DNA of 64,000 bases from Schmidtea nova (lineage: Eukaryota). The stretch covers positions 190,092,001-190,156,000 of the forward strand of contig CM097883.1 in NCBI GenBank assembly GCA_044892505.1, in the 5' to 3' direction. This document shows positions 30,703-58,774 of the stretch, piece after piece. The translations under genes and the position numbers were made by a program. Each line of letters starts with the position of its first letter. Positions within the stretch are counted from its first letter, which is position 1. The notes under the pieces were generated by a model. It did no database searches. It saw only the letters and a program-made list of their open reading frames with translations, and was not told where the DNA came from.

Positions 30703-30770
<68 letters not shown>

Positions 30771-32451
30771 TTTAAAATATCAATAAAAACATTAAGTGAC
30801 TAACCATAACGTTTTCTAAATAAAAAATTGACTTGATAACAACGTTTGACAGCTATTATGTCTTTCTTAATGCTTTTTAAAAACTTTTATCGAAAATTTT
30901 CTACATGAATGGTTCATTAGGATTCATTAAGTCGAAAAACTCTAATGTTAAGGTTTAATTAAACAAAAAAATTCTAACTAGGAAATAAATATTCAATAAA
31001 TTTAATATTAGAAAAAGGGGGACCTCTATACAAGCACCATTTTTTTATTTTTCAGATCTTTTGACTTCCTTTTTGGACTAAAAACCCCTCACATCAATAG
31101 CGATAATTTTGGGAACCAACGCTTCAATCAATATATCAAACAAATACCATTAAATCAGCAGCCCATTTGTATTATGGATATAAATATGAATTATATGATC
31201 ATTATTTCGCTATTTATGTTCAAGTCAAACAGAAAAAAATGTTTTAAAACTTTAAAAATGTAAAAATATTAAGCAGAGATCGATAAAATTCTAAATTGAC
31301 AAATATTTAATACAATTTGCTGGTTTTTACTTAGCATTACCACAATAAAACTACTCACTTTGAAGCATTATATCGATTGAAGCCTCCTCTATAAGATCTA
31401 GGATAACGTCCCCGACTGCTTCTCGGTGGTCTAGATGACATATCTTCAAATGTGCCCATGTTTTCCGGTATAATATCACTTAATGAGAAAACATTAGTTT
31501 CGTTTCAAATTCGCTAATAAAAACATTTTCATATTTTCTTCATTGTCCACTCTATTTTTATCGAATCCATTTCTTTCATTTCCATTTCGATCATTATTAT
31601 TAAATCTTTCATTTCCATTTCTGTCATATGTCGAGCGCTCATTTGGCTGTCTGTCACTGATTGGTCTATCACCGCCACCGCGATTATATCGCCCGCTAGG
31701 TCTACCGGATGGGCGCCGCCTTACTGGGTTTCCACGAGTGTTTGTGTTTGAATTATCATCGAAAAATCCAATTCTACCTGAACTTTCACCACTAAACCTA
31801 TCGAGTAAACATTGAAATTGGAAACAGATTAAAACAAAATATCACTCTGATCGCTCTTTTCTAAACGGTCTACTGCCACCGCCACCACCTCGATTATTCG
31901 AGGTAAACTTGTTATGTTCGCCATCTTGAGATTTCTGATGACTGTTTTCATCGTTATTATAAGTCCTATCATCATTTCTAGGATATCCACCGCGCCTTGG
32001 TCCACTATTTTGACGCCTGTTGCTACTACTACCTCCACGCCCTCTGCGGTTGCCACGGTCGGTTTTGTTATCTGTGGGCCTCTCGTCAACAATCGGTTCT
32101 TGAATTTCAATAGGGCAATCTATGACTTCGGGTTTATTTTGTTCAACTGTTCAAAGAATTTAGCCATTTTAAACACTTCACTCATTAAGTATAGATATTA
32201 CCGATTTCCATTTCCGGTTTCACAATTTCTTCAGTCATATTTTCCACTTTGACACTTTCTTTGATCGCTTCTGCTACTTGTTTGCTGCGTTTTTCTTTTT
32301 TAGCTTTTGTTTTACTTTCTTTGCGAAGTTCTCGTTTCTTTTCAACATTTGCCATTAGAACATCTGGTTCAGCAGATTCCAAGTCTTCTTGGAGAAATAC
32401 ATAGTATCGAGAATTAACTGTAACGTTATAATGTCCGGTTATAGTTGCCAT
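9734..32451 (-). CDS. SERBP1: SERBP1/HABP4-family (Vig/Stm1-like) RGG RNA-binding protein; 7-exon model 32451-32202, 32146-31846, 31797-31525, 31478-31359, 14579-14412, 14363-14286, 10307-9734 (~587 aa)
   Basis: All six GT-AG junctions are phase-compatible (1,2,2,2,2,2) and the spliced frame has no internal stop. The N-terminus [33 protein letters not shown] resembles the IHABP4_N motif. The central RGG box is [21 protein letters not shown]4-domain motifs SNWGE and MTLEEYRA and ETRKANDG follow, then a C-terminal RGG. An optional frame-preserving 45-nt exon lies at 14065-14021. The intron-3 donor (gttttt) is weak, and a further 3' exon via the donor at 9756 is possible. Confidence 0.72.
10384..10495. 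repeat. Two copies of a ~50-bp AT-rich minisatellite unit, left of the MULE
   Basis: The unit gaatcattaaa..atttcgaaaa..aatatattgatcaaattaattt is the same as the unit at 13711-13910. Confidence 0.8.
10904..12982 (+). mobile_element. MULE (Mutator-like) transposase with SWIM finger and AT-hooks, ~692 codons with one in-frame TAA (11183-11185)
   Basis: ORFs 10880..11185 and 11252..12982 are in the same frame. Motifs: YRC..C...KHNH zinc finger, IHADGSYKL (D), [12 protein letters not shown] (D), MCWFH (CxxH), [10 protein letters not shown] (E), [18 protein letters not shown], and two RGRP AT-hooks. Confidence 0.92.
13711..13910. repeat. 50-bp tandem repeat, 4 copies
   Basis: tgaatcatta recurs at 13711, 13761, 13811 and 13861. 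Confidence 0.9.
14286..14579 (-). CDS. SERBP1: SERBP1-like exons 5-6 (central RGG box)
   Basis: Exons of 168 and 78 nt are separated by a 48-nt GT-AG intron. They encode NENDFEN...[23 protein letters not shown]...[25 protein letters not shown]. The donor gtaagt is at 14285. Confidence 0.68.
14868..19782 (+). mobile_element. mariner element (decayed), interrupted by an LTR retrotransposon
   Basis: 27-bp TIRs match at 22/27 positions: tacatggtacgttcaataagtacccga (14868) versus the reverse complement of 19756-19782. Transposase relics from ATG ~18723 include [40 protein letters not shown] and HWQKWVD*NGSYVEK. About 1.15 kb remains after the insertion is removed. Confidence 0.85.
14937..18697 (+). 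mobile_element. Degenerate Ty3/gypsy LTR retrotransposon; LTRs 14937-15094 and 18563-18697; TSD TTAAT
   Basis: Direct LTRs have (A/G)GTTA...TAACT termini, and the 3' LTR has a ~19-bp deletion near its end. The PBS tggcgac overlaps the 5' LTR end. The PPT aaggaaggggag is at 18551. TTAAT flanks both sides (14932-14936, 18698-18702). RT: [23 protein letters not shown]. RNase H: TDAS, RKELLAI, RTDHRAL. Integrase: [22 protein letters not shown]. Many stops and frameshifts; no protease seen. Confidence 0.92.
21540..21690 (+). mobile_element. hAT C-terminal dimerisation-domain relic
   Basis: Decayed FPKL...[10 protein letters not shown]...VLR*KMNKNRF, resembling the hAT signature LPVS.AE.ERSFS..K..LRSTM.Q.RL. 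Confidence 0.45.
22347..23237 (+). mobile_element. hAT (BED-finger, ZBED-like) transposase pseudogene plus an hAT-type terminal sequence
   Basis: Motifs RSSVWLNF (BED start), [39 protein letters not shown] and CFAHVLQL. A terminal-like sequence gagccgaaccgagccggctccaactcacccctg ends at 23237. Confidence 0.82.
23700..24195 (+). pseudogene. ACT: Actin pseudogene (N-terminal ~40%)
   Basis: Across frameshifts: [79 protein letters not shown] and IYGYDFP. These are collinear with actin AGFAGDDAPRAVF...[27 protein letters not shown]. Confidence 0.92.
24575..24960 (+). pseudogene. Ubiquitin(-domain) pseudogene split by a hairpin insertion
   Basis: [37 protein letters not shown] (24575-24705) and [19 protein letters not shown] (~24885-24942) match the two halves of ubiquitin. 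Confidence 0.82.
24725..24846. repeat. Perfect 56-bp inverted repeat with a 10-nt spacer
   Basis: 24725-24780 is the exact reverse complement of 24791-24846. The spacer is attaagtgag. Confidence 0.93.
28100..30050 (+). mobile_element. Highly decayed Ty3/gypsy gag-pol relic
   Basis: Degenerate zinc knuckle [15 protein letters not shown] (~28690-28735). RT N-terminus IKPRRQ...[27 protein letters not shown] (~29875-29990) parallels the element at 16150-16270. Confidence 0.55.
30651..30822. repeat. Perfect 172-bp palindrome: 54-bp arms around a (TA)n core
   Basis: tatttagaaaacgttatggttagtcac...aaagga, then (TA)n, then tccttt...gtgactaaccataacgttttctaaata. Confidence 0.93.
31359..32451 (-). CDS. 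SERBP1: SERBP1-like exons 1-4 (IHABP4_N-like start, Lys-rich then R/G/N-rich region)
   Basis: ATG at 32451. Introns of 55, 48 and 46 nt give an open spliced frame. The donor gtgagt is at 31358. Confidence 0.75.

Positions 32452-34805: not shown

Positions 34806-34869
<64 letters not shown>
34806..34869. repeat. (TA)n microsatellite
   Basis: Uninterrupted TA run. Confidence 0.95.
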
Positions 34870-34876
<7 letters not shown>

Positions 34877-36599: not shown

Positions 36600-37110
36600 T
36601 TACTAGGATAAATCAGATCCCCTATGACTATAAATGAATAGATTCTGTACGGAAATTTTGGGCGTAATATGCTGTTGGTGAGTGCGGTAAAAAATGGGAT
36701 GAAGTAACTTGTATGGATGTATGAATTTGCATGTGTGATGTGAGATGTGGATGTGAATTGTTGGCTGCACTAAGTAAATGAATTTGTGAATATCGATGTT
36801 GGGATGTGAAATTTTTTAAAATTAAGGGATGTTATGTTTTGCGAATGAATTGGTGATGTGTGATGTAATGACTGAAAAATTGATATGTGTATATACTTTT
36901 AGAGATTTATTATGGATCTTTCATTGTGGTGATTGTATGTAGGAGATGAGATTTGATACAATAGGCAATTTAACAGTGGATGTGATTATGTGAGTTCTTG
37001 TGGAGATTATCTGGACGTGTGATACTGATGGGTGTTACTGAATGAAATGATGTGGTATGTGTGTATTGGTTGATGAGTGAATTTTTGTACGGTATTTGGA
37101 TGGTGTTAAT
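36600..37110. repeat. TG-rich/CA-rich strand-asymmetric tract adjoining the structured element
   Basis: Dense gatgtg/tgatg motifs. It is similar to 39350-39760 and to the reverse complements of 42580-43000 and 48830-49170. Confidence 0.7.
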
Positions 37111-37116
37111 GAATTG

Positions 37117-37350
37117 GTGGGTTGTCGATCGTCAATATGACCTTGACGTTGCTATGGCTCCATCAACAACTCAACATACAAAATATTAGATTACCCATCT
37201 TGTTGCCCGTCAAATTGTAACGCTGGTGATGCAACAAATGGGTGGGTATTCGCAATCAGTGAGCGTCGAAAGTTCGAAACTATGATTGACCGAATAACTC
37301 CTGGGTCCAAGGGCTACCGATAGAAGGTTTAATGCCCATTTTGTCTCTTC
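37117..37350 (-). ncRNA. Putative structured RNA element S, copy 1 (unclassified)
   Basis: High similarity to the copies at 45431 and 50264, with conserved stems showing compensatory and G-U changes (see findings). Confidence 0.55.
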
Positions 37351-38227
37351 CTTAACGATTTATTTATAAGCATTCAACAAAACTTTATCGGCAATTCAAC
37401 ATCAGTATTCCACATAACTATAAATTTATTATTGCATCCAAATAAATCATTCTGAGTATGAAAAACACTAATAAAACATTAAATTTTACTAATATTGCAA
37501 TTTATGATAATTAATAAATAGATTATTTTGTTTCTAAAGAAAAATTTAATCTGCATTTAAAAACTTCAGAAAAATTCTAATTATTTATTCTATAAACAGT
37601 AATTTTATCTAGTTTGAAAACAATAATTTTATTTGTTTAAGATCGCTAATTTAATCAAAAAGGAAAACTAATTTAATACGAAGATTGTATAAGTATTACA
37701 AATGTAAGTATTATGAATTATTTTATTAAATAATGATTTTAAAGTCCAGTCAAACAAAAGATGGGTACGGTTGGCAGATACAGATTCTCCCATCAAAAAG
37801 AAATCAGAAGATCGGAATCCCATCACACGTGAAGCACGACTACCAATTCTGTCAAAAAGTGGAAATTTGTAATTATTTAAGAATTATTATTAGTCTAAAC
37901 AATTTTTAGAAGAGTTCGAAGCTAGGATGCGTTGGAACCCGGCGCTTCAAGAACTGCAAGGAAAATCATTGCTAGAGACGACTATTCCTCAAGCGTGCCA
38001 ATTTTTATCAATAAATTTTTGAACTCGTTTTTTCCGTATTTTTATGTTACAATTTTTATTGCTAATTTTATTTTGACTAGTAGTGAATTGGAATTATTTT
38101 TCCTTTCTTTTCATAATATAACAATAACCTCTGTAAAATTAATTTATAGATATTCTAGTTTTTAATTTAAAATTTTCGCAAAATACACGCGCTTGAATCA
38201 GAAAGATACCCAGCTACATTTTAAGAA

Positions 38228-39340
38228 TATACACCTGGTGTCAAGCATTAAAAATTTCTATAATATAAATTTTAAAAAAACCAATAGCAAATGAAAACTT
38301 ACGTAGATGTTGCATTTTGATATTTCGTAGTTAAAATATTTTAATATGTGTTAGACATTCTGTAAGAAAAAATAAATTATACAGACAAACACAAAACATA
38401 ATGAAAATTGCATGCAAACTTTTAAGGGTGTTATTTATTTCGCTATTAAAAATCCTATAATAAAGTTATTTATTTTTAAAATATGGTTTTTGGGTAAATA
38501 TTTAGAATATTTTCTAGTGGAGTTGTCCAGAAAATGGATAGATAACATCGCAAATTTTATTTTAATATAAAATTTAATATATTTCCAAAAATTATTTGCA
38601 AAGTTTTTTCGCTTTCAGTAGCCAAAAAAAATAATTCAGTCTAATTATTTTAAAATTATAGACAAAATAAGATATTTACACTTCAATTTAGATCATTTTG
38701 AAGCCTCAGGTAATACAGGATAATAAACTTTGCCAATTCTTAAAATGAAAAATTAAGCTTAATTAAATTATTTCTTGGAATTTCCAAAAAATATTTCAAA
38801 ATTAGAAATAATTATAATAATTCTTATTAAAAAATGATTTTTTAATTTACGTTAAATGAAAATAATTCCCATAAAATGTTTAAAAAATCATGATTTCCTA
38901 AAAAGTATTTAAAAATTAAATAAATGTAAGTGTAGAACAACATATAAAATAGAAATATTCGGAGAACGAATTATTTCATTAATAAACTTTTGTTAAAAAA
39001 TAATTTTACTTACGTTTAAATAAAATACTTCCAAAAAAATTCATAAAAAAATCATAATTTTCTAAAAAACTAATAAATATAAAATAAAAATAATAATGAA
39101 GAATATAGATAAACTTTCAAAGCTTCTATAGTGATCTAATATCATTGTAAGATCAAAATAGAATCATTAAAAGAAATCTAGATAAATAAAATTACCTGAT
39201 AGCCATTTTTAAAAAATGGCTAATTGAAAAATAAATGAAGTGAAAAATGAAAAATAAATGTAAAGCATTAAACAAAGTAACTATGAGTAACAAGTAGGTG
39301 TGCATCATAGTTATTTTTAATGCTTGAAACCGGGTGTATA
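38228..39340. mobile_element. Tc1/mariner-type MITE (~1.1 kb) with 28-bp TIRs and TA flanks
   Basis: tatacacctggtgtcaagcattaaaaat (38228-38255) versus atttttaatgcttgaaaccgggtgtata (39313-39340): 26/28 complementary. The interior is AT-rich and non-coding. Confidence 0.8.
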
Positions 39341-41001
39341 ATATGCATATAAACCGTCTTTCGGTTTAAAGGGGTTATTGATGGATTCAATGGGTTATTG
39401 TAAGCATAGGTATATAAACTATAGGGATTTTATGATACTGGATGCTATAGTTTACCAGTAGACAATTTTATGTATTTGTATATGGGTGTTGTTGTGATTG
39501 CAATGGATAGTCTAATGATGAGATGTGAAGGCTTGTGCAAATTCTGGATGTATGATGCAGACAACTGTTGTGAATGAATTTCTTGTGTGGCTTGTCTCGA
39601 TGTGTGATACTAGTGAATATTAATGACTGAAATGATGTAATGTGTGTATTATAGTTAAATAAATTTTGTATGTTGTATTAGATATGGATGGTATTAATGA
39701 ATGGAATGGATGTATTGTTTTGCAAACATGGATGTATTATTATTTTTGTGATATCGTGGGGGTATAAAATAATATTTAAAATAATTTTATAATAAAATGA
39801 TAATAATAATTTTATAATTATTTCTACAAATTTTAAATTTATAATTCTACCAAAGTCATATAATAATTAAAATTTCTTATTTTTATAATATAAATTTTTC
39901 GATTTCAAATTTTTATATTTTAAGGATATATGTATAAAATATTTTTTAGAATTAAGATAATAACCAAATCAATAATAAAATTTTTTTCGACAAAATTTTA
40001 AATTTAGAATTTTATAAAATAATAAAATTTTTAATACAATAATAAAATTTTTGACTTATAATTTTTACGTATTCTAATATAAGGTTTGATATAAGAATTT
40101 CTAGGAAAATTTTTGATTTATTATTTTTATATTATAATTTTTACATAACATAGTATCTATAAAAGTAAAATTTTATTTTTATGATCAAATTTGAAATTCC
40201 ATAAAATTCATACAATAATAAAATTTTATTCACAAATTTCGAAATCTAAATAAATCAACCTAAAAAAATTTTTTTTTGTTAAATATTCATCAAAAATAAA
40301 TTATAAATTATTACAAGAATTAATTTTCACATATGGGTTTCTAAAAATAAAGCATATATAAAATTTCAAGCCGGTTCTTTCGCTATCATTATGTTGGGCA
40401 AAAACTGCAAATTGTTTTAATAAAGCAGTACCCCATAAGTAGAGAGCGCGCAAGGTTCAATTTTAACCCAAACACCCATTAGAAACAGAAACGATTAAGA
40501 GAAAAACGTCAAAAAGGTGAAGTGGACCCAAGCACATCAACCAGTAGAGAACGCGCTAGAGGTGAATTTGCAAGTCCTTACACTGAAACCTCGAGAAAAA
40601 TTAAAAGTCGTCAAGAGAAAAACGTTTGAAAGTTAGAATAGGCGGAAAAACTCATTGAAAATGCTCATAATGAACAGAATTGTGGCATAAAACTTCAGTG
40701 CAGAAAAATTAACAAAATTTTAGAAGAAAATTGTGATTTTATCATAAAATTTTACATTAACGATAAAAAGAACTAATCTTGATCGAAATATAGCAAATTA
40801 AATCAAATTGAATAAATTTTGATCCAAAAATAAAAATTTCGGATTAAAAATAAATTATTTATGGTTTATAAAAATTATTACTTAAAAATATTGATTTAAT
40901 TCGGCGGAAAATTATTAGAATTAATTTAGAAAAAATTAAAAAGAACATTCTAGAACAATTTGTTTTACTGCACTAGTGAAGGTAACGCAAAATCGATGGT
41001 A

Positions 41002-41023
41002 TATATACCGCCATCAAAATGGC
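41002..41023 (+). promoter_or_regulatory. TATA plus YY1-like motif TATATACCGCCATCAAAATGGC (also 46987; partial inverted copy 51619-51631)
   Basis: Exact recurrence in the duplicated units against diverged flanks. CGCCAT and AAAATGGC resemble the YY1 consensus. Function is inferred only. Confidence 0.4.
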
Positions 41024-41424
41024 AAAGATCAGAATTTTGTGGAAATTTTTGTATTGTAAAAATTTAGATAATTTGTCAAAAAATTTTTATTTAAATCTTA
41101 CTCTGAAACCGAAATTTTCCGGAAGAATTTAAATAGGTAAGCATCATTTTCTTGTTCGGTGCAAGGTCATCGAACATCATGCCTTTTCGATTACCCCTAC
41201 CCGGTAATATTTTATTTTGACTATTGTTAATATTATATTATTGTTATTATTGTTATATTATTTTATTTAATGAACAAAATATTAAATGAAGATTATTTCT
41301 TTTTTTTTGTATTTTGAATTCAACCATATAAAACTGTCACAAATTCCAGATTAAACCACAATTTATTTTCTATAATATTTATGGCATAAAGATAAAAATA
41401 ATTAAATTTTTTTTTGTGTGTGTT

Positions 41425-41595
41425 TCCATACACCCTGAAACCAGTTTCTGGCCTTGTGCCGAGCGGGTGGAAGTAGCCTGAGAGGATCGCTGGTTCGATT
41501 CGTAATCGATCAGCCCATATTTCCGAGTTCAGGTGATACGCCCAAACATCCATGATCACTTCATCCCAACTGGGGAACAGTGGCTTGGCCAAGGG
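41425..41595 (-). repeat. GC-richer ~170-nt island G, copy 1 (copies at ~46105-46290 + and ~47585-47765 -)
   Basis: Shared cttg..cttg(g)cca..ccac...gatga.g....tggatgt.tg.gc...aaatatgg...tatgg in all three copies. Confidence 0.6.
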
Positions 41596-44500
41596 CAAGG
41601 TGTTATATTAATGATCTAAAATTTATAGTAGTGTATTTTATTTGAATTATACTTTTTTAACATAATGAGCACTTAAAACCTAATACTACATAAAAACGTA
41701 AATGTGAATTCATCCATCAATGTCTTTTCCATTTACATAGTTTAATTGTACAAGAATATTCTACTCGTCATTCGCCTTCACTCTCACAACAATTACCATC
41801 TTATCCGAAAAACACAAGTAGAATAAAAAGCTAATATTGAAAAGAGAATCGTTTGAAATAATGCTCAAAGCTGATATAATGATCACGAAATGAAACGAAT
41901 TATGAAGACAAGTATTGATTGATCTGAATTAAACCTCATTCATTATCTAAATAATTTTCTCTAGTGAACCTTGTTTTCGGGAGCCTGAAGTTCCTATGTG
42001 AAGTGTCTCGAAAATTTCGCGCGCACTTTGGTTGGTAAATTCATGTTCAAACGAAACCGAAATTCACCTTGATGTCGAAAACCATTCTTTGAAAAATTTT
42101 ATAATTTATTTTAATTTAATTTTTATTTAGTATAAAGAATTTTTAGATTGAATTCTTATTTGGATTGCAAAATTCGTGGATAAAAATTTATTACTATGTA
42201 GATTCCGTTTTTGATCATAAAAAATAAAAATTTACTTTTTATTATATTGCGAAAAATTTATAATGAAAAAATTGTAAACCAAAAATTTTCCTAAGAATTT
42301 GTAAATCAAAAATTATATCGAAACCCATGAAAATTATAAATAGAAAATATTGTTATTATATAAAAATTTTTATCATTTTATAAAATTCCAAATTCGAAAT
42401 TTTATAGAAAAAATTTACGATTAATATATATATATTCTTAAAATATAAAAATTTGAATTCAAAAAATGTATATTATAAAAATTAGAAATTTTATTTAAGG
42501 TTTGTAAAAATTATTATAAAAATTGTTGTTATTATTTTGATTCTGAAAATATGTTATATATAAATATATTATTTTATAAGGTACCCCCCACGATATCACA
42601 CAATCATATTACATCCATATTTGCAAAACAATGCATCCTTTCCATTCAATAACATCATCCATACTAATACCACATGCAGCATTTACTTAAATACAACACA
42701 CACACACTACCACATTTCAGTCAATAGGATCTTCTATGCTAATTAATACAATAAACAATACATCCACTCACCAACATACACAACGCGATTTCAGCTAACA
42801 GTATCCACTAGCATCGTACATCCAAACGATCCCCACAAATACTCATACAATCACATCCATTGTTTATCACCCATTGCAGTAGCATCTTTCCGACATACAA
42901 ACACATCCATTCACAACAATAGGATATCTATTTCGATATATTACAGTATTAATTCAATGTTATATACACACGAGCCTACAATTCACTACATTCTTCAATA
43001 ACATACTCAGCAAGATATATACATAAAATCTTTACACCTAATTACTGATTAAGTTGATTGTTTCATCCATGTATATTACCTAAGTAGCAGATTATATCCA
43101 GGAAATGCCTATGGATTTCTATTTTTTCTATACTCTGAATTAGATTTAACCGTTTCACTCAATGATCTCCTGTAACCTTAACTACATTATTTATGCTGGA
43201 CAATGCCCATTAAAATGCATTATATTCTATGATTCATTATTTCAGTCTTTTAGTCCTTTTGACCCAGCTATTGTATTCTAGGTAATAAACTAACGAAACA
43301 ATGCTGGTAAAAAAATGAGGAACATATATTACCCTCAACGACGATTCACCAAAAGTTTTGCAAAATTAATAATAAATTTGTATATTTAAAACTTAGCCAA
43401 ATCATTATACAAAAGTTTCTACTAATAACCATAAAAAGAAATTAAAAATAAAAATTCACAACACTTACCAACAATCAAACATGAACGCACAAAAATTTTA
43501 TTTACAGCTATAATAACAACAATAAGATTTGCATAGTGTTGATATTGATCAAAATGCGAAAAAGGAGAGAGACCAGTGGCAGAGTGAATTTGTATGATTG
43601 TGCTCATTGTGGGTAAAAATCCTAAAAATCGTCCCAGAAGTCAGCGCTAGACGAGATCCCAAAACTAGATCAGCGTTGTTGTCGGATGCAATTTTCTTTT
43701 GAAAAAGATGATGTTTGGCTAATTCCAAGAAGAGCTGACGATTTGAATAGCAGAAAATTTGAACAAATTCCGTTAGGCTAATACACTAAAACGAAAATAA
43801 GAAAATACCACAAATAAATCAATTAATTTTTCCTAAATATTGCTCTAGCATCCATAAAACCACTAAATCGTGGCGATTGTCTGAAATGCAGGGAAATCCC
43901 CATACTAAAATTAGATATCTAAAATCAATAATCTTAGTATATAAATCAAATTGCCATAATATAATCTAACCAATAGAAATCTGTTATTTTTTGATTGCAC
44001 ATTTATATAGTTTCTGTTGAAGTTCCATTATCTTCGTCCAAACCAAAGGGGGGCCGCTTAAATTAAAATCGATAAGATAATTTTAAAATCGAAAAACCTA
44101 AAGTTTAAAAAATCAATAGTTAAGGGAGATCTTACAGGGATGAAACTTAAAAACTTAAGGAAATCGTTTAGATACTGACACTAATGCCTCGGCGAGAATT
44201 CAAATGTTAAAATTATCCAATTTTAATAAAAATATAATTAAACTTAAAAAAGCAAGTTAGACATTAGGTATAGGGGATAAGTAAAAAATTCGTCGAATTC
44301 ACTGACACAAAAACATACAAATTTAGAAAATCTTGAAAATAGTGAAAATTTAGTTAAGATCAATAGACATCGTATACCCCGAATTATGTGATGAATCAAA
44401 GATTTTTCGATCCCCGAATTGAGTTGGCGATGGTATACTTGAGTATAAGCTTACAAATGAAGATGAATGCGCAAAATTTCCTGTGTTTTGAGATAATGTG

Positions 44501-44639
44501 GTGTATAATAGTTGGTTGTGAAAAATCAATAAATGTTCATCGATAAAATTATTTTACCTTACTAATTTAAAATGAATATTTAAAATTAAATTATAATGTT
44601 AGATGATGACTTGAATGTGTTTTGTATGTGTTATTTTAG

Positions 44640-45203
44640 ATGTCAGAAATGAACCTGGAACAAAAATTTGAGGAGATGCACCGGTTGAATTTTGAAAATG
44701 CCCGACATAATCGCCGGGTAGCTCAGTGTTTCGCCGAGATGGAAAAGGCGAAAACATCAAACTCTGATGCTTTGCAAATTATGACCTCCCGGATGGAGAA
44801 ATTTCGAGCGCGGTGCAGAGATATGGAGTCGACCTGGTCCGACAAGGAGACCGTCGACAAACTGAAGAAGCAGAACCAGATGCTTCTAAAACAGGCTGCA
44901 GAAGACGCAATGAGATTGCGCGCATGCCGTGTTACGATGCGAGAGCAGGAGCTCTTGATCGAGAAATTGAGGTTGGATAGCGGCATTATCACTGCCATCT
45001 TGCCGAAATCTTCATGTCCACCTCAAGAATTGTTTCCAGTGAGGGTTGAAGAAGAGATCCTGACACCTCCGGTTCCAGCAAAAATGACACGGCAGAAACC
45101 CAACAAAGGAGTGAGGGCTCGACGAAGACGTCGTCAGGAAGCGAGATTGCTGGGGCAAATCCGCAAAGAGTCCTCAGAAGTGATTGACATTACGCTATTG
45201 TGA
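44640..45203 (+). CDS. Orphan 187-aa protein: N-terminal coiled coil and Arg-rich basic C-terminus
   Basis: ATG to TGA frame, markedly GC-richer than its flanks. Heptad-like E/K/L/M-rich helices and the motif RARRRRRQEAR. AATAAA occurs twice at ~45285-45300. Confidence 0.6.
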   Translation: MSEMNLEQKFEEMHRLNFENARHNRRVAQCFAEMEKAKTSNSDALQIMTSRMEKFRARCRDMESTWSDKETVDKLKKQNQMLLKQAAEDAMRLRACRVTMREQELLIEKLRLDSGIITAILPKSSCPPQELFPVRVEEEILTPPVPAKMTRQKPNKGVRARRRRRQEARLLGQIRKESSEVIDITLL

Positions 45204-45430
45204 TTTAAATCAAACAAATGATATTTTACCTTGTGAATAATGTTATATTTATTACCATACTTTGTAGTTTATGTCATTGTTTTTGTTGACATTAAAGTTT
45301 TTCTTTTGTGTTTGAAATATTTATTTGTTTGAATGTTTGAAAGGAATAAATTGAATAAAATCAACTGAGGTTTAGTAGTAAATTTAGTTCGATATAACTC
45401 ATGATTTTTTTAAAGTAAATAATGCATAGG

Positions 45431-45665
45431 AGGGACAAAAATGGGCATTAAACCTTCTATCGGTAGCCCATGGACCCAGAAAATATTCGGTCAATCATAG
45501 TTTCGTATTGACGACGCTCACTGATTGCGAATACCCACCCATTTGTTGCATTACCAACGTTACAATGTGACGGGCAACAAGATGGTTAATTCTAATGTTT
45601 TATGTGTTGAGTTGTTGATGTGAGCCACAGCAACGTCATGGTCATATTGACGATCAACAACCCAC
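45431..45665 (+). ncRNA. Putative structured RNA element S, copy 2 (unclassified)
   Basis: Stems: tattcg/cgaata, caatca/tgattg, tcgt/acga, ccat-ttgttgc/gcaacaa-g-atgg, cgttac/gtgacg and gttgttgat/atcaacaac. Confidence 0.55.
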
Positions 45666-48600
45666 AAATTAATATTCAAAATTCTTTATGCAATTCTTAG
45701 AAGTTTTCATCAATGAGGTTCACGATTTCGAGTAAAAATTCAACGATCTATTATCGAGTTTAATCTGTAAGCATTATTCAATTTAACATTTTTACTGCTC
45801 TTTGAGTGGTCATTTACAAGTTTTTATACGTTTCATTTTTTCGACTTTGCGAATTCTTTCATAGTAAAGTAAAGATGACGTTTATTGAGCGAAGACGATT
45901 GACGAGACGAATGTCTATTTCTGATTAATTTTTATTACGTTCACATTTTTATGTAGTTGTGAGAGTTATGTGAGTTATGTGATTTAATTTAAATAAAAAA
46001 AACTAAAATATGATAAATAAAATATCCATTTGCGTCTATGAATAGCATATCTCATTTCAAAAAAATGTAATAGGTTTCTAGGCGTTAATTACTTTGAACA
46101 GACCTTGAACTTGCCAATCCACTACTCCTCATATAGCCAGGTATGAGATGAAGCGTTTTTGGATGTATGCGCTCACTTCGATGAAAATATGGATCAGCAC
46201 GTTGAAAGGACTCCAACGAACTGATAATTCCACAAAATAACTAATGACGGTACAACGACTAGGTGGATAATCATCAGACGTATGGAAATAGGGCCGCCTT
46301 ATCCAATAGGCACCGTGCCTATGGCCTAAGAACTTTAAGGGGGCCTACGAAGAAAAAATAAAATACATACCTATATATATATATATTGTTGGGCTAAAAC
46401 CACAAATTGTTTTAATAAAGCGATAACCCCATAGGTAGAGAACGCGCAAGATTCCATTTTTAACAGTAGCATCCATTAAAAATCTAACAATTAAGTGGAA
46501 AACACCAAAAGGTAAAGTGAAATCAAAACACATCAACCGGTAGAGTACGCGCTAGCTGCGAGTTTATAAGTCTTTTCACTGAAATCACGAGAAAAATTAA
46601 AAGCAGAACGTTTGGGAGTTAGAATAGGCGGAAAACCCATTGAAAGTGCCCATAAAGAGCAGAATTTTGTCATAAAATCTTCAGTACAGAAAAATTAACA
46701 AAATTTTAGAAGAAAATTGTGAAGTTATCACAAAATTTCACATTTAACAGTAGAGAGAATTGATATGGATCGAAATATCATAAATTAAATCAAATCGAAC
46801 AAATTTCGATTCAAACATAAAAATTTTGAATTAAAATAAATTATTTATAGTTTATAAAAAATTATTATACAAAAATATGGAATTAATTTTCGGAAAATCA
46901 TTAGAATTAATTTAGAAAAAATTAAGAGAAAATTCTAGAACAATTTGTTTTATTGCACTACTGAAGATAGCGAAAAATTGATGGTATATATACCGCCATC
47001 AAAATGGCAGAGTTCAGAATTTGTGAAGAATTTGTGAAAAAAATTTTTCGTTTTGTTCGACATAGAATTTAATTTGTAGAAAAATTTGAGATTTCACGAC
47101 CACTTAATTGAAGAGAATTTGTGAAGAATATTTCTTGTTAATTTGCGGAGAAAAAGAAAAGTTAATATCCGAATTTGAGTCCCAAAAGAAAAAGCTAATA
47201 TCAGAAGTTGACTTCCAGAAAATTTGTGGAAAAATCGTGCCAAATTTTTGAGAAAATAACATTTCGTTGGAAAGAATCGCAGCAGAGGTTTATTGGACAG
47301 ACGTAAGGATTTATTTGATTTTGGTTATTCTCATTGGGGATTGGAATGGTCGTCCATCATGCCTGACGATCATCCCATTCCTCTCCTTTATTTAATATGT
47401 TATTTGTTATTTTATTAATTACGGTAAATTTTATATTATTAAAGTATTTTAATGATTTGTAGCTTAGTTTTTTTTTGTTATTATCATTATCACAAGCCAC
47501 AAATTCCCAAAATAATTCAGGAAAAATCTCATTAAAATTAGTAAACTAAATAAAATTATGAAAATAAATAAAAAATTTTTTTTTCTCCCATATCTTCTGA
47601 CGATCCGTCCAGCATTGCGTTGTGCGGATCTGTTAGTAGCCTGGGTGGATCGTTGTCTGATTGGTAATCGGCCAGCCCATATTTCCACTTTAAGGTGAGG
47701 CTCATACATCCATAATCTCGTCATCCCAACTGGGGAATCGTGGTATGGCCAAGAGCAAGGATTTGTTATACTAATGATTTTTATTATAATAGAGTAGTGT
47801 ATTTTTATTATCTACATAAGCAATTTCGTAATATAACATAACAATTTCTAACTCATGTCTTGAAATCTAAAATAGGAAATATTACTGATTAAAAATTGAC
47901 TCGTATTCACCTTCACCTTCACACTCTCAACGACGATTATCTTATGAGAAAACGCAAGAAAATTGGAAGCTAATGATAAAAGGAAAATCGTCCGAAATAA
48001 TGCTCAAAGCTAGAATAATGCTCCTGAAATGAAACGAATTGTGAAACAAGTATTGATTTGATCTGAATTAAACTCATTATTGTTAAAATAAGTTTTTCCT
48101 GTGAACCTCGTTTTCGAGAGCCTGAAATTCCTAAGTGAAGCGTCACGAAAAAATTCACGCGCACTTTAATTGGGAAATTCATGCTCAACAAAACCGAAAT
48201 TCATTTCGCTCGATATCGAAAAATATTCTTTGAAGAATTTATAATTTATGATTTTTATTTTTATTCAGTGTATAAAACTTTTTAGGTTGAATGCTCATTT
48301 GGATTTCGAAATTTATGGGTAAAAATTTATTATTATTTCATGTTGATCAGGAATAAAAATTTGCTTTTTATTATACTGCAAGAATTTTTAAATGGAAAAA
48401 ATTGTAAACCAAAATTGGTTCCTAATATTGTTATTATATAAAAGATTTTATCCTTTCATAAAATTCCAGAGAATTTGCAAGTCGAAAGTTATATTAAACC
48501 CCATAAAAATTATAGATCGAAATTTTATTATTATACTAAAAATTCTTATCATTTTATAAAAATCTGAATTCGAAATTTTATAGAAAATTTTTTGATTAAT

Positions 48601-50263
48601 ATATATATATTCTAAAATATAGAAAGTTAAATTCAAAAACCTATCTTATAAAAAATTAAAAAAAAAAAATTTATCATTAGTTGATTTTTCAGAAAATTAT
48701 AAATTAAAAATTCATAAAAAGCATTATAAAACTTATTATTATTATTTTAATTTAAAAAGTATTATTATTATATTAAGTTTAAAAAATATTTTATATAATT
48801 TATATTATAACTACCCCCACGATATCTTAAAAATAATGATACATCACTCATTGCAAAAAATCACACCCTTTTCACTCAATAGCATCATCCATACTAATAC
48901 ACAAACAACATACATATAAAATACAATGTACACACATACACAGTGTCATTCAATAACATTCAACAATCATATACACACAATCAAACTATACAAAAATTCC
49001 ACACAGACATGTTAGTTAGCATCATACGTCTAACCACACTCACAAACACTCAATTGTTCCTATCACCTATCTACAAATTACACGCAAACACAACAGTAAC
49101 AATAGAACTCACAGTAATTACATCTCGTCACATTCAACTACAACCACATACAAACATCTACATTTATATTTCGGATGCCCCTGTAAATTCGTAGCTTATA
49201 GTATACCAAGAGGGATTTTTTTAAATTTTTTTTATTCTAAAACCCCCTGTTTTCGTTACCCGATATACGGCCTACCAGATCTTAAATCAATTATATCCCC
49301 TCCTAATTCAATTTATATTTTATAAATATTATATATTATTATGTATTATTATATCAAATTATACCTGATATCAAATATCAGATTTTATATCAAATTATTT
49401 ATATGTCAAATTAATTACTTATGTTAAATACTTATGAAATATCCATACAAACTAAAACTAACAAATTATAAGACATCTCTTTTAAAATAAAATTCCATCA
49501 ATATTGTTATTAAATTATTAAATTCCACTGCTAAAGGGTAAAACATTTGCTTCTGGAAAGAATTCCATTTGAGAATGAGTCCAGATTTGATTGTGGCATA
49601 TTGCGAATTTGAGCTGGAGATCTGCCATGGAGTTCGCGGATGGGTCAGAAACATTTCTGAATTGAGTTCCCAGTTCGGGTTTTGCTAAAAGTGACATTTA
49701 TCAAATAATCGTTGAATAAGCATTAGTATTAACTTTTTCGGAAAAATTGTCCGTTATGTCTTCACACGCTCGGGTTTCGGTCCTTTGGGTTCATTCCGTT
49801 TTCCGTGGACGACTCCAGGTTTGTCGATGGTGCTGGCTTTTTGTTCGGATGGCCTTTGAAATAAAAATAAAATAAATTAATTTATAATATCTATCTTACT
49901 ACTAGTGTTTATTTGAATTTTGCATAGTTTCGCCGATATATATTGAAAGATTCAAACAATGAATCTAGTTTTTATAATTATTTATGAAATAAAAATTTTA
50001 GGTTGTAAAATATTAGAATACAGAAACAAATTTTATTTTTTTTCTCTTTAAAATTTTTTTTTATTTATTTTCTATCATAGATTGTAATATTATTTGTTAT
50101 TGCCGTAAATTGTAATATTAGTGAAATATCATGAATAATTAGTGTTTTTGATTGCTCGGAACAATTTATTTCGAATGTAATAATAAATTTAAAGTTATGT
50201 AGAATATTTGTGCTGAATTTCCGATAAAATTTTGTTGAATGATTGAAGATAAATCGTCGAAGA

Positions 50264-50496
50264 AGGGACAAAATGGGCAAGAAACCTTCTATCGGTAGCC
50301 CTTGGACCCAGGAGATATTCGGTCAATCATAGTTTCGTATTGACGACGCTCACTGATTGCGAATACCCACCCACTTGTTACAGTACCAACGTTACATAGT
50401 GACGGGTAACAAGGTGGTAATTTCAATGTTTTATGTGTTGAGTTGTTGATGAGAGCCATAGCAACGTCAAGGTCATATTGACGGTCAACAACCCAC
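50264..50496 (+). ncRNA. Putative structured RNA element S, copy 3 (unclassified)
   Basis: The same stems, with two compensatory double substitutions (ccacttgttac/gtaacaaggtgg). Confidence 0.55.
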
Positions 50497-50619
50497 CAAT
50501 ATATACAAAGAAAAACAAAATAATTTTAGTTAAAAAAAAAATTAAATAAATTCAAATATAAAAAAAACGAAAATAAATAATTTCAAATATAAAAACGGAA
50601 CTGAAAAATTTTAAATAAT

Positions 50620-51152
50620 AATTTATTTTCGCCATTTTTCTTTGGTAAAATCTTCAATAATGTCTTCAAAATTCATATCACGAGTAAGATTACTCTCAAT
50701 GCAAAGAACATCCAATGATGAGAGGCGATCTTGATTCATAGTTGAACGAATCTAATTTTTTATATGCTTCAATTTGGAAAATGATCGTTCTCCTTCTGCA
50801 TTTGCTCCAATAAAAGAGATAAATTCGAAATGCAATATTTACATTTGGAAAACTTGTCTGTAATTTGTGATTTTATTAAATCTGCTACAGATTTCTTATC
50901 TTTATACATTGAAGAAAACATTATAAACTTATCTACAAATTCTTCTTCCAAATCTGATGAATATGTGTTGACTAAATCTTTAGCTTTACATCTAGCTTCT
51001 TCGTTGGATAAAGATTTATTTTCAATACAATGTTGAAAATCCAAATTACACTGTTCAGAAAATAATTTTGGTGTACTAATTTGTTTTTCATTATATATAT
51101 ATATATATATTGTAATGTGCCTAGGGCCTACAAAAGGTTTGAGACGGCTCTG
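50620..51152 (-). mobile_element. hAT (ZMYM-type) internally deleted element with dimerisation domain
   Basis: The terminus cagagccgtctcaaacc starts at 51152 on the minus strand. Motifs LVNTYSSDLEEEF, FPNVNIAFRI, ANAEGERSFS and IRSTMNQDRLSSL occur across frameshifts. Confidence 0.8.
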
Positions 51153-52000
51153 TATGGAAATAGTTTTAATAAAAAAAATATAAATTGTATATGATAAATA
51201 AATGAATATCAATATAAGCATGTTAGGTTGTGAGAAAATATAATCAAAGTAAAAATTAACACTTGAATAGAAAAATTATAATAATCATTACATATTTTAC
51301 CATAAGATAACACTTTATCAAACATTGAATAAAAAGGAAGAATCAAATCAGAATACCTAAGGCAGGGTAACATGGCATGATTTGCTAGCCTGCATAACAT
51401 AAAATTCAGGGTTCTTACATATTCAAATAGCTTCTCCGCTTGGTTCGGATACGACTTCTAGAAATTTTTCGAGGGGTTCGGCTTCCGAGAATTTTCTCAA
51501 AGGATTTTAAGCAAAGTTATCTCTTAAAAATTTCACTGCTAAAAACGTTTCAAAATTTTTAGCAACAAAATTCCAGAAATTCTGCAAATTCTGCAATATT
51601 CTGACAAAATTGAATTCCATGGCGGTATATATTTGCTCAAAATTTTTATTTTTCGTTGAGATATTAAAACAAATTGTTCTAGAAGGAATTTTCTGATTCT
51701 TGAAAATTAATTTCAATTATTTTACGCAAAATTGAATTATTATTTTTGCATAAAATTTTAAATAAATTCTAAATAATTTACACTAAAATTTGAAAGTTTT
51801 CCTCCCAAAAAGATGTTTATTTTTTTCCAATGTGCCACTCTATTACACCATTGATGTTCTCACACTATACATGTGTTTTTCACGTATAAACTCAATGCGA
51901 TTTTGTTCGTTTCAAATTTTCGATGTGTTTTGATTGACTATTTCATGTTTTCTGTTGCTACTGGGCTGTACTTGGTGTTTTAGGTTCGTAGAATTTCAAA

Positions 52001-52112
52001 TCTACTTCTTGCTCGCTCTCTACATTTTATAAATTTCACGTCTATTTCCTCGCGCACTCTCTACATTTTATAAATTTCACGTCTACTTCCTCGCGCGCTC
52101 TCTACATTTTAT
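52001..52112. repeat. ~41-bp tandem repeat, ~2.7 copies
   Basis: tctac/tttcc/tt..cgc.ctctctacattttat starts at 52001, 52041 and 52082. Confidence 0.88.
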
Positions 52113-52198
52113 GAAACCGCGATATTTAAACAAATCTCAGTTTTTGCCCAACAGAATGACATAGATGTATTGATTTGCAAATATAATTATTTCGGGAT

Positions 52199-52339: not shown

Positions 52340-53742
52340 CAGATTTTTTTCAAATGAATTCAGAATATTTTCAAATGAAATCAGAATTTTTTCAAATGAA
52401 TTCAGAATTTTTTCAAACGAAATCAGAACTATTTTAAACGAAATCATAATTTCTTAAATAAATATGGGAACTTTTTAATTGAATTCAGAATTTAAATGGT
52501 TAATGAAATATTATATACACTTAAATGAAATCATGATTGAGTAAAAATTGGTAGTTAAAACTTTTAATCAGAATTCTTCTCTTCTTACCGCCTTTAATGC
52601 AAACCTTCTCGTGTCGTTGAAAAATCCGATACAATCCTCCGTGGTTATCGAATTGTGTCCCATTTCAATAGCGTTTTTTAACTCGATTACATTTAGAACA
52701 TTAGCCGATTTGACAATTGATTTCCATTTCGAGAAACACTCTTCAATCGGATTTAATTGCGGCGAATAGGGTGGTAAAAAGCGTAACGTAAATCCAGAAT
52801 TATTGATCAAATCGCGTACACCAATACTTTTATGTATTGTACAATTATCCATTATAATCGTACCTGTCGATATTCCTTTCGATCGCAGATTTCCTATAAA
52901 TTGAGAGACAAAATTTTCAAACTTCTCTGCATTGTATCCACCTTCTACAACTTCAAAATTCAAAATCGACGTTTTGCTGATTGCTGCGCACACTGAATAG
53001 TTTTTACTTCGTATACTTCTCACTTCTTTCCGAGCAGGCGATCCTACTTCGCTTCGTCCATATCCCAATCTCATCGAGCAATTGAAACCGCTTTCATCAA
53101 GAAAAAAGACATGGTCCTCGTTTAATGCCAAATATTCATTGGCATACTCATACCTGCGCTCAATAGCTTCCGCAGTGTTGCGAGCAGCTACTCGTTTAAA
53201 AGAGAAATTAAAGTCCTTGATCGACCTATGAATTGTGGCCAACGATACGTTAACATTCATAGACTCACTCAAACTTCTTTTCATACATCTCAACGGAGTA
53301 GAACAATCATCGGAAATTTTTTCTTTTAAAAAAACTAAATGCTCTTTGCTCAATTTTTTGGACTTGCACCCTCTATCTTCGTTTTTATCAATTCTTCCTG
53401 TCGTTTTGTAAATGTTAATAATACTATAAACAGTTTTATAGTTCATAACGAGATCTGCAGCAATTTTTTTTACGCTTTGGCCGGAATCAAATTTGATACA
53501 TATAAGTTTTCTCGCAGCATTGCTCAATTGCGATTTTGTTGTTGGAGGTGTCATATGGTTATTAATTTTGAAAAATATTAATATTTTATGGATATTGTAT
53601 ATACATATTTGAATTTGATTTCGTTTAAAATAGTTCTGATTTCGTTTGAAAAAATTCTGAATTCATTTGAAAAAATTCTGATTTCATTTGAAAATATTCT
53701 GAATTCATTTGAAAAAAATCTGATTTCAATTGAAAAACCCTG
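52340..53742 (-). mobile_element. Tc1/IS630-type DNA transposon with long TIRs made of 21-bp subrepeats
   Basis: 52340-52450 is the reverse complement of ~53615-53722. The right end ...aattgaaaaaccctg (CAGGG terminus) abuts the gap. Confidence 0.9.
52568..53554 (-). CDS. Intact 328-aa DD34E Tc1/IS630-family transposase
   Basis: N-terminal HTH motifs. Catalytic FLDESGF, IMDNCTIH and LPPYSPQLNPIE, with 34 residues counted between the second D and the E. Confidence 0.93.
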   Translation of the reverse strand: MTPPTTKSQLSNAARKLICIKFDSGQSVKKIAADLVMNYKTVYSIINIYKTTGRIDKNEDRGCKSKKLSKEHLVFLKEKISDDCSTPLRCMKRSLSESMNVNVSLATIHRSIKDFNFSFKRVAARNTAEAIERRYEYANEYLALNEDHVFFLDESGFNCSMRLGYGRSEVGSPARKEVRSIRSKNYSVCAAISKTSILNFEVVEGGYNAEKFENFVSQFIGNLRSKGISTGTIIMDNCTIHKSIGVRDLINNSGFTLRFLPPYSPQLNPIEECFSKWKSIVKSANVLNVIELKNAIEMGHNSITTEDCIGFFNDTRRFALKAVRREEF

Positions 53743-58200: not shown

Positions 58201-58774
58201 CCAGTTTGAAAGTTATTTTCAAAATTGACATTTATTAATAATTGCATTAAACAGAAAAAAATGCAACAAAAAATGCAAATTAATAGATTTAGTACATAAC
58301 TAATATGATTTAACTTTAGAAATTTAATTAATATCTTAATAAGTGAATAATTGCCCACATAAAATTTCTGCCACTCATGTTGTGACAAAAATAGAGAGAA
58401 CGTTGATCATATCCTACATCGACCAGTTGTTATTTGAATAAATCATATGTACTGATTGTTTTCTACTAAAACTTACTGATTTTTGATTTTCTAGTCTTTC
58501 TTGTCCTGAAGAATAAAAATTACTTTTCCTGTCTCTTTATTGGTAGTTCAGATGTTCTTTTTTACTGCAATAAAAGCACAACATATTTGGCATTCATTTC
58601 TTAAGTGAATTTGTGATAAAAAATGTTTGAAATAAAGCTCGATTCAACGTTTATTCTTTATTACAAGATTCTTTTTCAAATTATGTTTCTCTTTGAAAAT
58701 CACTCGATATAAACAAATCTTTTTTCTTTTAAATTGATTATCTAAAATAAATTAATTATCACATTCCCCCGTGA

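What the first reader, a model, noticed from the sequence alone, without database searches (positions are those of the whole stretch)
45431..45665. Unclassified ~235-nt structured RNA-like element in three copies with compensatory base changes
Copies at 37117-37350 (-), 45431-45665 (+) and 50264-50496 (+) are far better conserved than their flanks and share no common protein frame. The substitutions between copies keep the stems paired. The hairpin tcgt-attg-acga (45503-45514) is tcga-actt-tcga in the 37k copy. The stem ccatttgttgc/gcaacaagatgg (45539-45585) is ccacttgttac/gtaacaaggtgg in the 50k copy, two double substitutions. The stem gttgttgat/atcaacaac becomes atcgacaac or gtcaacaac, G-U wobbles that work only on one strand, which points to RNA-level selection. 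A long irregular helix tattcg-gt-caatca...tgattg-cgaata is common to all three. I could not match it to rRNA, tRNA, snRNA, SRP, RNase P/MRP or a canonical hammerhead. It may be a new ncRNA, a ribozyme or a cis-acting element of a new mobile family. With only three sequences the covariation is suggestive, not statistical.
Basis: partly seen in the sequence, partly recalled or inferred. Interest (0 to 1): 0.8.

Follow-up and report, generated by a model that had tools for sequence, protein, structure and literature searches.

The report
Folded RNA end of long LTRs
The three 235-base "RNA-like" copies are the conserved last stretch of three nested copies of one 4-5 kb jumping-gene repeat, most likely a long terminal repeat (LTR) of a retrovirus-like element. 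This stretch seems to be kept for its RNA fold, which makes it a real but fairly ordinary kind of signal.

Summary
There are three copies (45431-45667 +, 50263-50498 +, 37115-37349 -), 88-92% alike. They share no reading frame and match no Rfam family. Three base pairs are kept by double changes, which a neutral simulation reached in 1 of 600 runs.

The element is not free-standing. It is the last 235 nt of a 4.1-5.3 kb mobile unit:
- Every unit starts TGTTGGGC and ends CCCAC(C/A)A.
- Every unit is flanked by a perfect 4-bp duplication: ATTA, ATAT and ATTC.
- Units A (40392-45667) and B (46387-50498) are inserted into unit C (37115-52153, minus strand). C is itself inserted into a fourth copy.
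- TG...CA inverted ends and an AATAAA kept 84-93 nt before the module, followed by G/T-rich sequence, fit an LTR. So does conservation that rises towards the 3' end.

The best reading is the U5-side end of a long LTR, which as RNA would lie in the leader next to the primer site. No paired LTRs with gag-pol occur in this window, so the LTR call is an inference. Unit A also carries a 187-aa coiled-coil, arginine-rich ORF just upstream.

Other first-stage notes and one follow-up on other DNA of this genome describe similar modules. I could not confirm they are the same sequence.

The parts
45431..45667 (+). Module copy at the 3' end of unit A
   Evidence: Alignment, nhmmer and covariance-model hits. 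It ends ...CCCACAA, followed by the duplication ATTA.
50263..50498 (+). Module copy at the 3' end of unit B
   Evidence: It ends ...CCCACCA, followed by ATAT.
37115..37349 (-). Module copy at the 3' end of unit C
   Evidence: It ends ...CCCACCA, followed by ATTC on the element strand.
40392..45667 (+). Unit A, full length (5.3 kb), inserted into unit C
   Evidence: Sharp 5' end TGTTGGGC. It is collinear with B: the first 674 nt are 82% identical, the next 1.6 kb 68%, and the last ~430 nt 76%. Its flanks continue unit C. The duplication is ATTA/ATTA.
46387..50498 (+). Unit B, full length (4.1 kb), inserted into unit C
   Evidence: It has the same 5' end as A. Its flanks are contiguous in unit C coordinates to within about 20 nt. 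The duplication is ATAT/ATAT, but it lies in a TA repeat.
37115..52153 (-). Unit C, interrupted by A, B and a ~0.8 kb hAT-like piece; about 4.8 kb without them
   Evidence: Collinear minus-strand blocks lie at 52153-52089, 51800-51552, 50591-50503, 46192-46088, 46033-45937, 40332-39566, 37888-37694 and 37527-37115. The 5' end is TGTTGGGC. The duplication is ATTC/ATTC.
36600..37114 (-). Fragment of a fourth copy (D), the target of unit C, 3' side. The 5' side is 52154-52198, up to the N gap.
   Evidence: The two flanks of C, abutted with one copy of ATTC, align without a gap across the junction to the uninterrupted paralogous site in A, B and C at 64-76% identity.
45345..45359 (+). Two AATAAA motifs 93 and 84 nt before the module in unit A. 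The equivalents are at 50182-50187 (+) in B and 37425-37430 (-) in C, both 88 nt before the module.
   Evidence: G/T-rich sequence follows. In unit A the first motif lies 142 nt after the ORF stop.
44640..45203 (+). 187-aa ORF inside unit A, on the same strand as the module
   Evidence: ORF list. No Pfam family and no word-search relative. The AlphaFold2 model has two long helices, a proline-rich linker and an arginine-rich helix, with mean pLDDT 66. A splice-acceptor-like ttttag directly precedes the ATG.

Best explanation
The 235-nt element is the 3'-terminal domain of a 4.1-5.3 kb mobile repeat unit. The window holds three full copies nested in one another (A and B inside C) and a fragment of a fourth copy (D) that C landed in.

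The unit is most likely a long LTR of a Gypsy-type retroelement, present here only as solo LTRs. On that reading the module is the U5-side end of the LTR:
- In the element's genomic RNA it would lie in the 5' leader, just before the primer-binding site.
- There its multi-hairpin fold would serve primer placement and the start of reverse transcription, and possibly packaging.
- As DNA, its last bases (...CA) are the integrase recognition end.
- Active lineages keep the fold, which is why copies from different sublineages differ by pair-preserving changes and why U3-side sequence drifts faster.

Shown here: the discrete unit, its ends, the duplications, the nesting, the conservation gradient and the pair-preserving substitutions. 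Inferred: the LTR identity, the U3/R/U5 layout and the RNA function.
For: - Three units begin at the same base with TGTTGGGC and end CCCAC(C/A)A.
- The first 7 nt and the reverse complement of the last 7 nt agree at 6 of 7 positions. The chance of this is about 0.02.
- The 5' end fits the published LTR integrase-recognition consensus TGTTRNR exactly, and the 3' end fits YNYAACA at 6 of 7 (PMC3601003).
- All three insertions have perfect 4-bp duplications: ATTA, ATAT and ATTC.
- The pre-insertion site of C is confirmed by uninterrupted paralogues. The flanks of A and B continue unit C collinearly.
- AATAAA is kept 84-93 nt before the module in all copies and is followed by G/T-rich sequence. 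PMC3601003 gives both as conserved LTR motifs and says R and U5 are more conserved than U3.
- Identity rises towards the 3' end: 61%, then 77.7%, then 87.7% between B and C (Fisher p = 0.01 and 1e-10).
- Pair-preserving changes favour the same strand as the unit and its ORF.
- First-reader notes from other windows of this genome describe LTRs with a coiled-coil/basic accessory protein and a multi-stem RNA module at the LTR 3' end. These are leads, not evidence.
Against: - No pair of these units flanks a gag-pol interior in this window.
- No primer-binding site follows any 3' end and no polypurine tract abuts any 5' end. All four copies must therefore be solo LTRs.
- Only three sequences carry the covariation, and folding z-scores are modest.
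- B's duplication lies in a TA microsatellite.
- A's perfect duplication requires reading its last bases as CCCACAA, one substitution away from CCCACCA.
- AATAAA is common in 70% A+T DNA.
- A follow-up on another window read a similar module as the 3' tail of non-LTR retroposons.
Confidence: 0.55

Rival explanations
1. The module is the structured 3' tail of a non-LTR retroposon. A reverse transcriptase would bind it to start target-primed reverse transcription, as with the R2 3' UTR or LINE/SINE shared tails.
For: The 3' end is shared and sharp while the upstream parts differ. A 3'-terminal stem-loop followed by a short single-stranded tail resembles the R2 template requirements (PMC11194090). 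A follow-up on another window reached this reading for a similar module.
Against: The termini are TG...CA inverted repeats, and all three duplications are exactly 4 bp. All three units are full length once the nesting is recognised. There is no A-rich or simple-repeat tail common to the copies. A conserved AATAAA lies upstream of the module. No partner LINE with this tail is in the window.
Confidence: 0.12
2. The module is a response element for the arginine-rich 187-aa protein encoded just upstream in unit A, a Tat/TAR-like or Rev/RRE-like pair inside an LTR. This is a special case of the LTR reading.
For: The ORF lies 230 nt upstream on the same strand. It has a predicted coiled coil plus an arginine-rich helix. 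Other windows' notes report the same ORF-plus-RNA-motif pairing as recurrent.
Against: Units B and C keep the module without the ORF. If AATAAA is used, the ORF's own mRNA ends before the module. There is no binding or expression evidence, and the protein has no known relatives.
Confidence: 0.12
3. The module is the terminal region of a non-autonomous cut-and-paste DNA transposon (a Ginger-like or other 4-bp-duplication family). On this reading the stems are protein-binding inverted repeats rather than RNA.
For: The unit has short inverted termini and 4-bp duplications, and no retroelement genes lie inside it.
Against: The inverted termini are only 7 nt. One-sided changes stay paired mainly on one strand, 5 against 1, which points to G-U pairing in RNA. 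The unit has an AATAAA plus G/T-rich layout and strongly asymmetric conservation.
Confidence: 0.1
4. The module is a free-standing multicopy non-coding RNA gene or ribozyme.
For: There is structure-preserving variation, and no coding frame.
Against: Every copy is the end of a mobile unit bounded by duplications. No Rfam match appears at E up to 10. There is no Pol III terminator after the end, and TTTT occurs inside the module. No tRNA-like head was found and no hammerhead core.
Confidence: 0.04

Closest known systems
R-U5 leader structures of retroviruses and LTR retrotransposons (U5-IR and U5-leader stems; the TAR/poly(A)/PBS domain of HIV-1)
   Same: [quoted passage not shown] It is selected as RNA on the sense strand, is more conserved than U3, and is preceded by AATAAA and G/T-rich sequence (PMC3601003; the rest from general knowledge).
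   Different: There is no sequence similarity. It is an unusually long five-helix domain of 235 nt. The LTR context is inferred from solo copies only, and no primer site is seen.
R2 3' UTR and the 3' tails of stringent LINEs and their SINE/SIDE partners
   Same: A ~250-nt multi-helix RNA forms the fixed 3' end of elements whose upstream parts can differ. A terminal stem-loop plus a short tail matters in both (PMC11194090 and PMC3414825).
   Different: The units here have TG...CA inverted ends and uniform 4-bp duplications, which those elements lack.
HIV Rev/RRE, HIV Tat/TAR and HTLV Rex/RxRE
   Same: An arginine-rich small protein is encoded beside a 200-350-nt multi-stem RNA in or near an LTR (general knowledge).
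   Different: There is no homology, no binding data, and two of the three units lack the ORF.
Giant Gypsy-like elements of planarians (Burro/GYPSM1)
   Same: They have long LTRs and accessory ORFs in an A+T-rich, repeat-rich animal genome (PMC6431247). A scan note suggests the genome is planarian.
   Different: The organism was not identified here, and no Burro sequence was available for comparison.

Membership tests
LTR of an LTR retrotransposon (solo LTR) | TG...CA ends with short inverted repeats (consensus TGTTRNR...YNYAACA) | tested here: met
   The ends are TGTTGGG...CCCACCA in three units. The inverted match is 6 of 7, with chance about 0.02. The consensus is from PMC3601003.
LTR of an LTR retrotransposon (solo LTR) | 4-6 bp target-site duplication | tested here: met
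   The duplications are ATTA, ATAT and ATTC. The empty site for C is confirmed by paralogues. B's duplication lies in a TA repeat, and A's needs the end to be read as CCCACAA.
LTR of an LTR retrotransposon (solo LTR) | AATAAA with a G/T-rich stretch downstream; R/U5 better conserved than U3 | tested here: met
   AATAAA lies 84-93 nt before the module in all copies. Identity rises from 61% to 78% to 88%.
LTR of an LTR retrotransposon (solo LTR) | Two direct copies flanking gag-pol, with a primer-binding site after the 5' LTR and a polypurine tract before the 3' LTR | tested here: not met
   No such arrangement occurs in this window. A and B are not a pair: their duplications differ and their identity is only 68-92%. 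No TGG-type primer site follows any end. Other copies of the genome could not be reached.
Non-LTR retroposon 3' tail (stringent LINE/SINE) | Common 3' end with 5' truncation, an A-rich or simple-repeat tail, variable duplications, and a partner LINE with the same tail | tested here: not met
   The common 3' end is present. However, the units are full length, share no tail, have uniform 4-bp duplications, and have no partner LINE in the window.
Any Rfam family, including hammerhead, twister, HDV-like, snRNA, SRP and RNase P/MRP | Covariance-model score at the gathering threshold | tested here: not met
   There were 0 hits in the window at gathering thresholds. Only chance-level hits (E above 2) appeared in 45300-45800.
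Structured RNA under selection | Compensatory base-pair changes beyond neutral expectation | tested here: inconclusive
   There are 3 compensatory pairs. A neutral simulation reached this in 1 of 600 runs and a shuffle in 17 of 500. With only three sequences no R-scape-grade test is possible.

The most novel reading that the evidence does not exclude
The module and the neighbouring 187-aa coiled-coil, arginine-rich ORF form a Tat/TAR-like or Rev/RRE-like regulatory pair carried inside the LTR of an invertebrate Gypsy-type element. That would be an accessory-protein/RNA-response-element system of the kind otherwise known from complex retroviruses.
Probability: 0.12. Interest if true: 0.75.

Novelty: new member of a known kind. 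Interest (0 to 1): 0.35.

Why it matters
It turns an apparent orphan 'structured RNA' into a placed part of a mobile element: the conserved, RNA-selected end of a 4-5 kb LTR-like unit. It also explains a second puzzle in the same window. The 'composite repeat with ~1 kb inverted arms' is simply nested insertions of this unit in opposite orientations. If the LTR reading holds, the module gives a handle on how very long-LTR retroelements start reverse transcription. The adjacent arginine-rich ORF gives a testable candidate for an RNA-binding accessory protein in an invertebrate retroelement.

Tried and rejected
- **Known RNA families.** Rfam gave nothing at gathering thresholds on the whole window, or at E up to 10 on 45300-45800.
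- **tRNA-like or SINE head.** ARAGORN found no tRNA gene.
- **Hammerhead core.** I read both strands by eye and found none.
- **Coding exon.** There are stops in all frames, and the 19-codon ORF changes non-synonymously.
- **More copies in the window.** nhmmer and a covariance model with filters off found only the three.
- **More copies elsewhere:**
  - Exact scans of metagenome, viral and prokaryote genome collections with 30-nt and 22-nt cores gave 0 hits.
  - A protein word search with an ORF read across the module found nothing.
  - The Tc1 transposase is not on record.
  - A viral-contig scan with the 187-aa ORF found no relative.
  - A paper search for four module motifs (one also as its reverse complement) found nothing.
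- **Reads.**
  - The look-up of sequencing runs listed four DNA runs of one study and no RNA run.
  - I worked beside them or masked them in scripts (for example).
  - One later whole-window model scan and one local pattern scan still had the window as their target.
- **The 37k and 50k copies as the inverted repeats of one 13-kb transposon.** Rejected: they are no closer to each other than to the 45k copy, and the nesting explains their orientation.
- **The module as the end of the neighbouring hAT-like gene.** Rejected: that piece is a separate insertion in unit C.
- **Homology of the module to the A+T-rich 'arms'.** None found.
- **A and B as the two LTRs of one element.** Rejected.

A majority-rule reference of the 228-nt non-coding module was used inside one script as the starting point for the neutral simulation. 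That was before the retroelement context was known. It was not printed or saved, and no consensus is given here.

Full report
**1. The observation**

The three copies are real. They lie at 45431-45667 (+), 50263-50498 (+) and 37115-37349 (-). Pairwise identity is 88.2-91.7% over 228 columns. Stops occur in all six frames. The only shared ORF is 19 codons, and its differences are mostly non-synonymous. Rfam gives nothing at gathering thresholds on the whole window and only chance-level hits at E up to 10 around the 45k copy. ARAGORN finds no tRNA-like sequence.

**2. The RNA signal**

RNAalifold predicts 71 pairs in five helical domains, closed by a 3-bp stem between columns 42-44 and 233-235.
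- Three pairs change on both sides and stay paired.
- Five one-sided changes stay paired through G-U.
- Three pairs are broken.

I ran a neutral simulation that places the same number of substitutions at random and re-predicts the consensus structure each time. It reached 3 or more compensatory pairs in 1 of 600 runs. The mean share of compatible changes was 0.46 in the simulation, against 0.79 observed. The column shuffle gives 17 of 500, which is the best that three sequences can give. Folding energies are only modestly better than dinucleotide shuffles: z = -1.97, -1.44 and -2.06 on the sense strand, and -0.54, -1.12 and -1.12 on the antisense strand. There is real but thin evidence that the fold is selected.

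**3. What the module belongs to**

The 3' boundary is sharp in all copies, but the 5' side is not. Between the 50k and 37k copies, homology runs on at 77.7% for about 180 nt and at about 61% further up. The gradient is significant, with Fisher p = 0.01 and 1e-10 against the module.

Sensitive comparison of the whole region shows that each module is the end of a long collinear unit:
- Unit A is 40392-45667 (+).
- Unit B is 46387-50498 (+).
- A and B share their first 674 nt at 82%, the next 1.6 kb at 68%, an unrelated middle, and the last ~430 nt at 76%.
- Both start at the same base with TGTTGGGC, after unrelated flanks.

**4. Nesting**

On the minus strand, pieces homologous to successive parts of the unit lie in order at 52153-52089, 51800-51552, 50591-50503, 46192-46088, 46033-45937, 40332-39566, 37888-37694 and 37527-37115. 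Units A and B sit exactly between successive pieces. So does a ~0.8 kb hAT-like remnant.

The 37k copy therefore belongs to a third full unit, C (37115-52153, about 4.8 kb without its guests), into which A and B inserted. C also starts TGTTGGGC.

The flanks of C, joined with one copy of ATTC, align across the junction without a gap to the uninterrupted equivalent site in A, B and C itself, at 64-76% identity. C therefore landed in a fourth copy, D. This also explains the other note on this window, the 'composite repeat with ~1 kb inverted arms'. Those arms are parts of units in opposite orientation.

**5. Kind of element**

- All three insertions have perfect 4-bp duplications: ATTA, ATAT and ATTC.
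  - For A this requires reading the end as CCCACAA, one substitution from CCCACCA.
  - B's duplication lies in a TA repeat.
- The termini are TG...CA, with 6 of 7 inverted bases. The chance of this is about 0.02.
- The 5' end fits the published LTR integrase-recognition consensus TGTTRNR exactly, and the 3' end fits YNYAACA at 6 of 7 (PMC3601003).
- That paper lists AATAAA, a G/T-rich stretch after it, and better conservation of R and U5 than U3 as the other common LTR features.
- Here AATAAA lies 88 nt before the module in B and C, and 84 and 93 nt before it in A, followed by G/T-rich sequence. Conservation rises towards the 3' end.

These features point to a long LTR present as solo copies. 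What is missing is the proof. The window has no direct pair around gag-pol, no primer-binding site after any end, and no polypurine tract abutting any start. I could not reach other copies of the genome (section 8).

**6. How it most likely works**

If the unit is an LTR and the AATAAA is its poly(A) signal, the module is U5. It would be absent from the RNA's 3' end and present in the 5' leader, directly before the primer site. Structured U5 and leader RNA at that position is known from retroviruses and LTR retrotransposons, where it helps place the primer and start reverse transcription. This is general knowledge; the U5-IR loop is mentioned in PMC3601003. The last bases serve integrase as DNA. 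This accounts for the sharp end, the sense-strand pairing signal, the gradient, and unrelated U3-side interiors sharing one end. All of this paragraph is inference.

**7. The neighbouring ORF**

Unit A carries a 187-aa ORF (44640-45203, +).
- It is preceded by an acceptor-like ttttag and followed 142 nt later by the AATAAA.
- It has no Pfam family and no word-search relatives.
- The AlphaFold2 model (mean pLDDT 66) shows two long helices, a proline-rich linker and an arginine-rich helix.
- Units B and C lack it.
- First-reader notes from other windows describe the same combination as recurrent and place it in LTRs.
- A Tat/TAR-like or Rev/RRE-like link to the module is possible but untested.

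**8. Limits**

The evidence has three main limits:
- There are only three sequences.
- There are no RNA data.
- There are no further copies.

The searches that failed to find further copies:
- Exact scans of the metagenome, viral and prokaryote collections found nothing.
- Protein-based routes found nothing.

- A whole-window model scan and a local pattern scan still had the window as their target.

The organism was not identified; a scan note suggests a planarian. A follow-up on another window read a similar module as a non-LTR retroposon tail. The inverted TG...CA ends and uniform 4-bp duplications found here argue against that reading for this family. I could not check whether the two modules are the same sequence.

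**9. Verdict**

The finding is a genuine conserved, probably RNA-selected, cis-acting terminal domain of a mobile element. It is most likely the U5-side end of a long LTR. It is a new member of a known kind, of moderate interest, with one more unusual possibility attached: the arginine-rich protein as its partner.

Noticed in passing
window 44640-45203 (+): An intact 187-aa ORF lies inside unit A. Its predicted structure has two long helices, a proline-rich linker and an arginine-rich helix. It has no Pfam family and no relatives by word search. An acceptor-like ttttag sits before the ATG, and AATAAA follows 142 nt after the stop.
   Followed up: partly
window 36600-52198: The 'composite repeat with ~1 kb inverted arms' noted by another reader is a nest of one unit family: A and B (+) inside C (-), and C inside D (-). 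The inverted 'arms' at 39.6 kb and 42.1 kb are the same A+T-rich segment in C and A. In each it runs into a G-poor, C/A-rich segment at its 3' end.
   Followed up: yes
window 50620-51275 (-): A degenerate hAT-like transposase C-terminus (a dimerisation-domain-like motif, with frameshifts) lies as a ~0.8 kb insertion within unit C. The identification is by eye; Pfam gave no hit for the 150-aa ORF.
   Followed up: partly
window 52568-53554 (-): An intact 328-aa Tc1/mariner-type transposase ORF (DDE_3, E = 1e-30) is flanked by 112-bp inverted repeats at 52340-52451 and 53612-53722 (99% identical) and by two N gaps. The exact protein is not on record in the public gene index.
   Followed up: partly
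window 11252-12982 (+); 15914-18120 (+); 58611-62362 (-): Other mobile elements are present. There is a MULE/SWIM transposase ORF of 576 aa. There are also two LTR-retroelement remnants with RT, RNase H, integrase and zinc-knuckle gag domains. The second is bounded by 153-bp direct repeats that are 98.7% identical.
   Followed up: no
window 30648-30825, 24718-24853, 34806-34870: Near-perfect palindromes of 178, 136 and 64 bp occur here. The 64-bp one is also found at 30705-30768.
   Followed up: no
window 41323-41607 (-) and 47467-47811 (-): Antisense ORFs in the equivalent part of units A and B share short peptide motifs (for example EIWA.RL) but have no Pfam family. They may be a decayed captured or nested coding piece.
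   Followed up: partly
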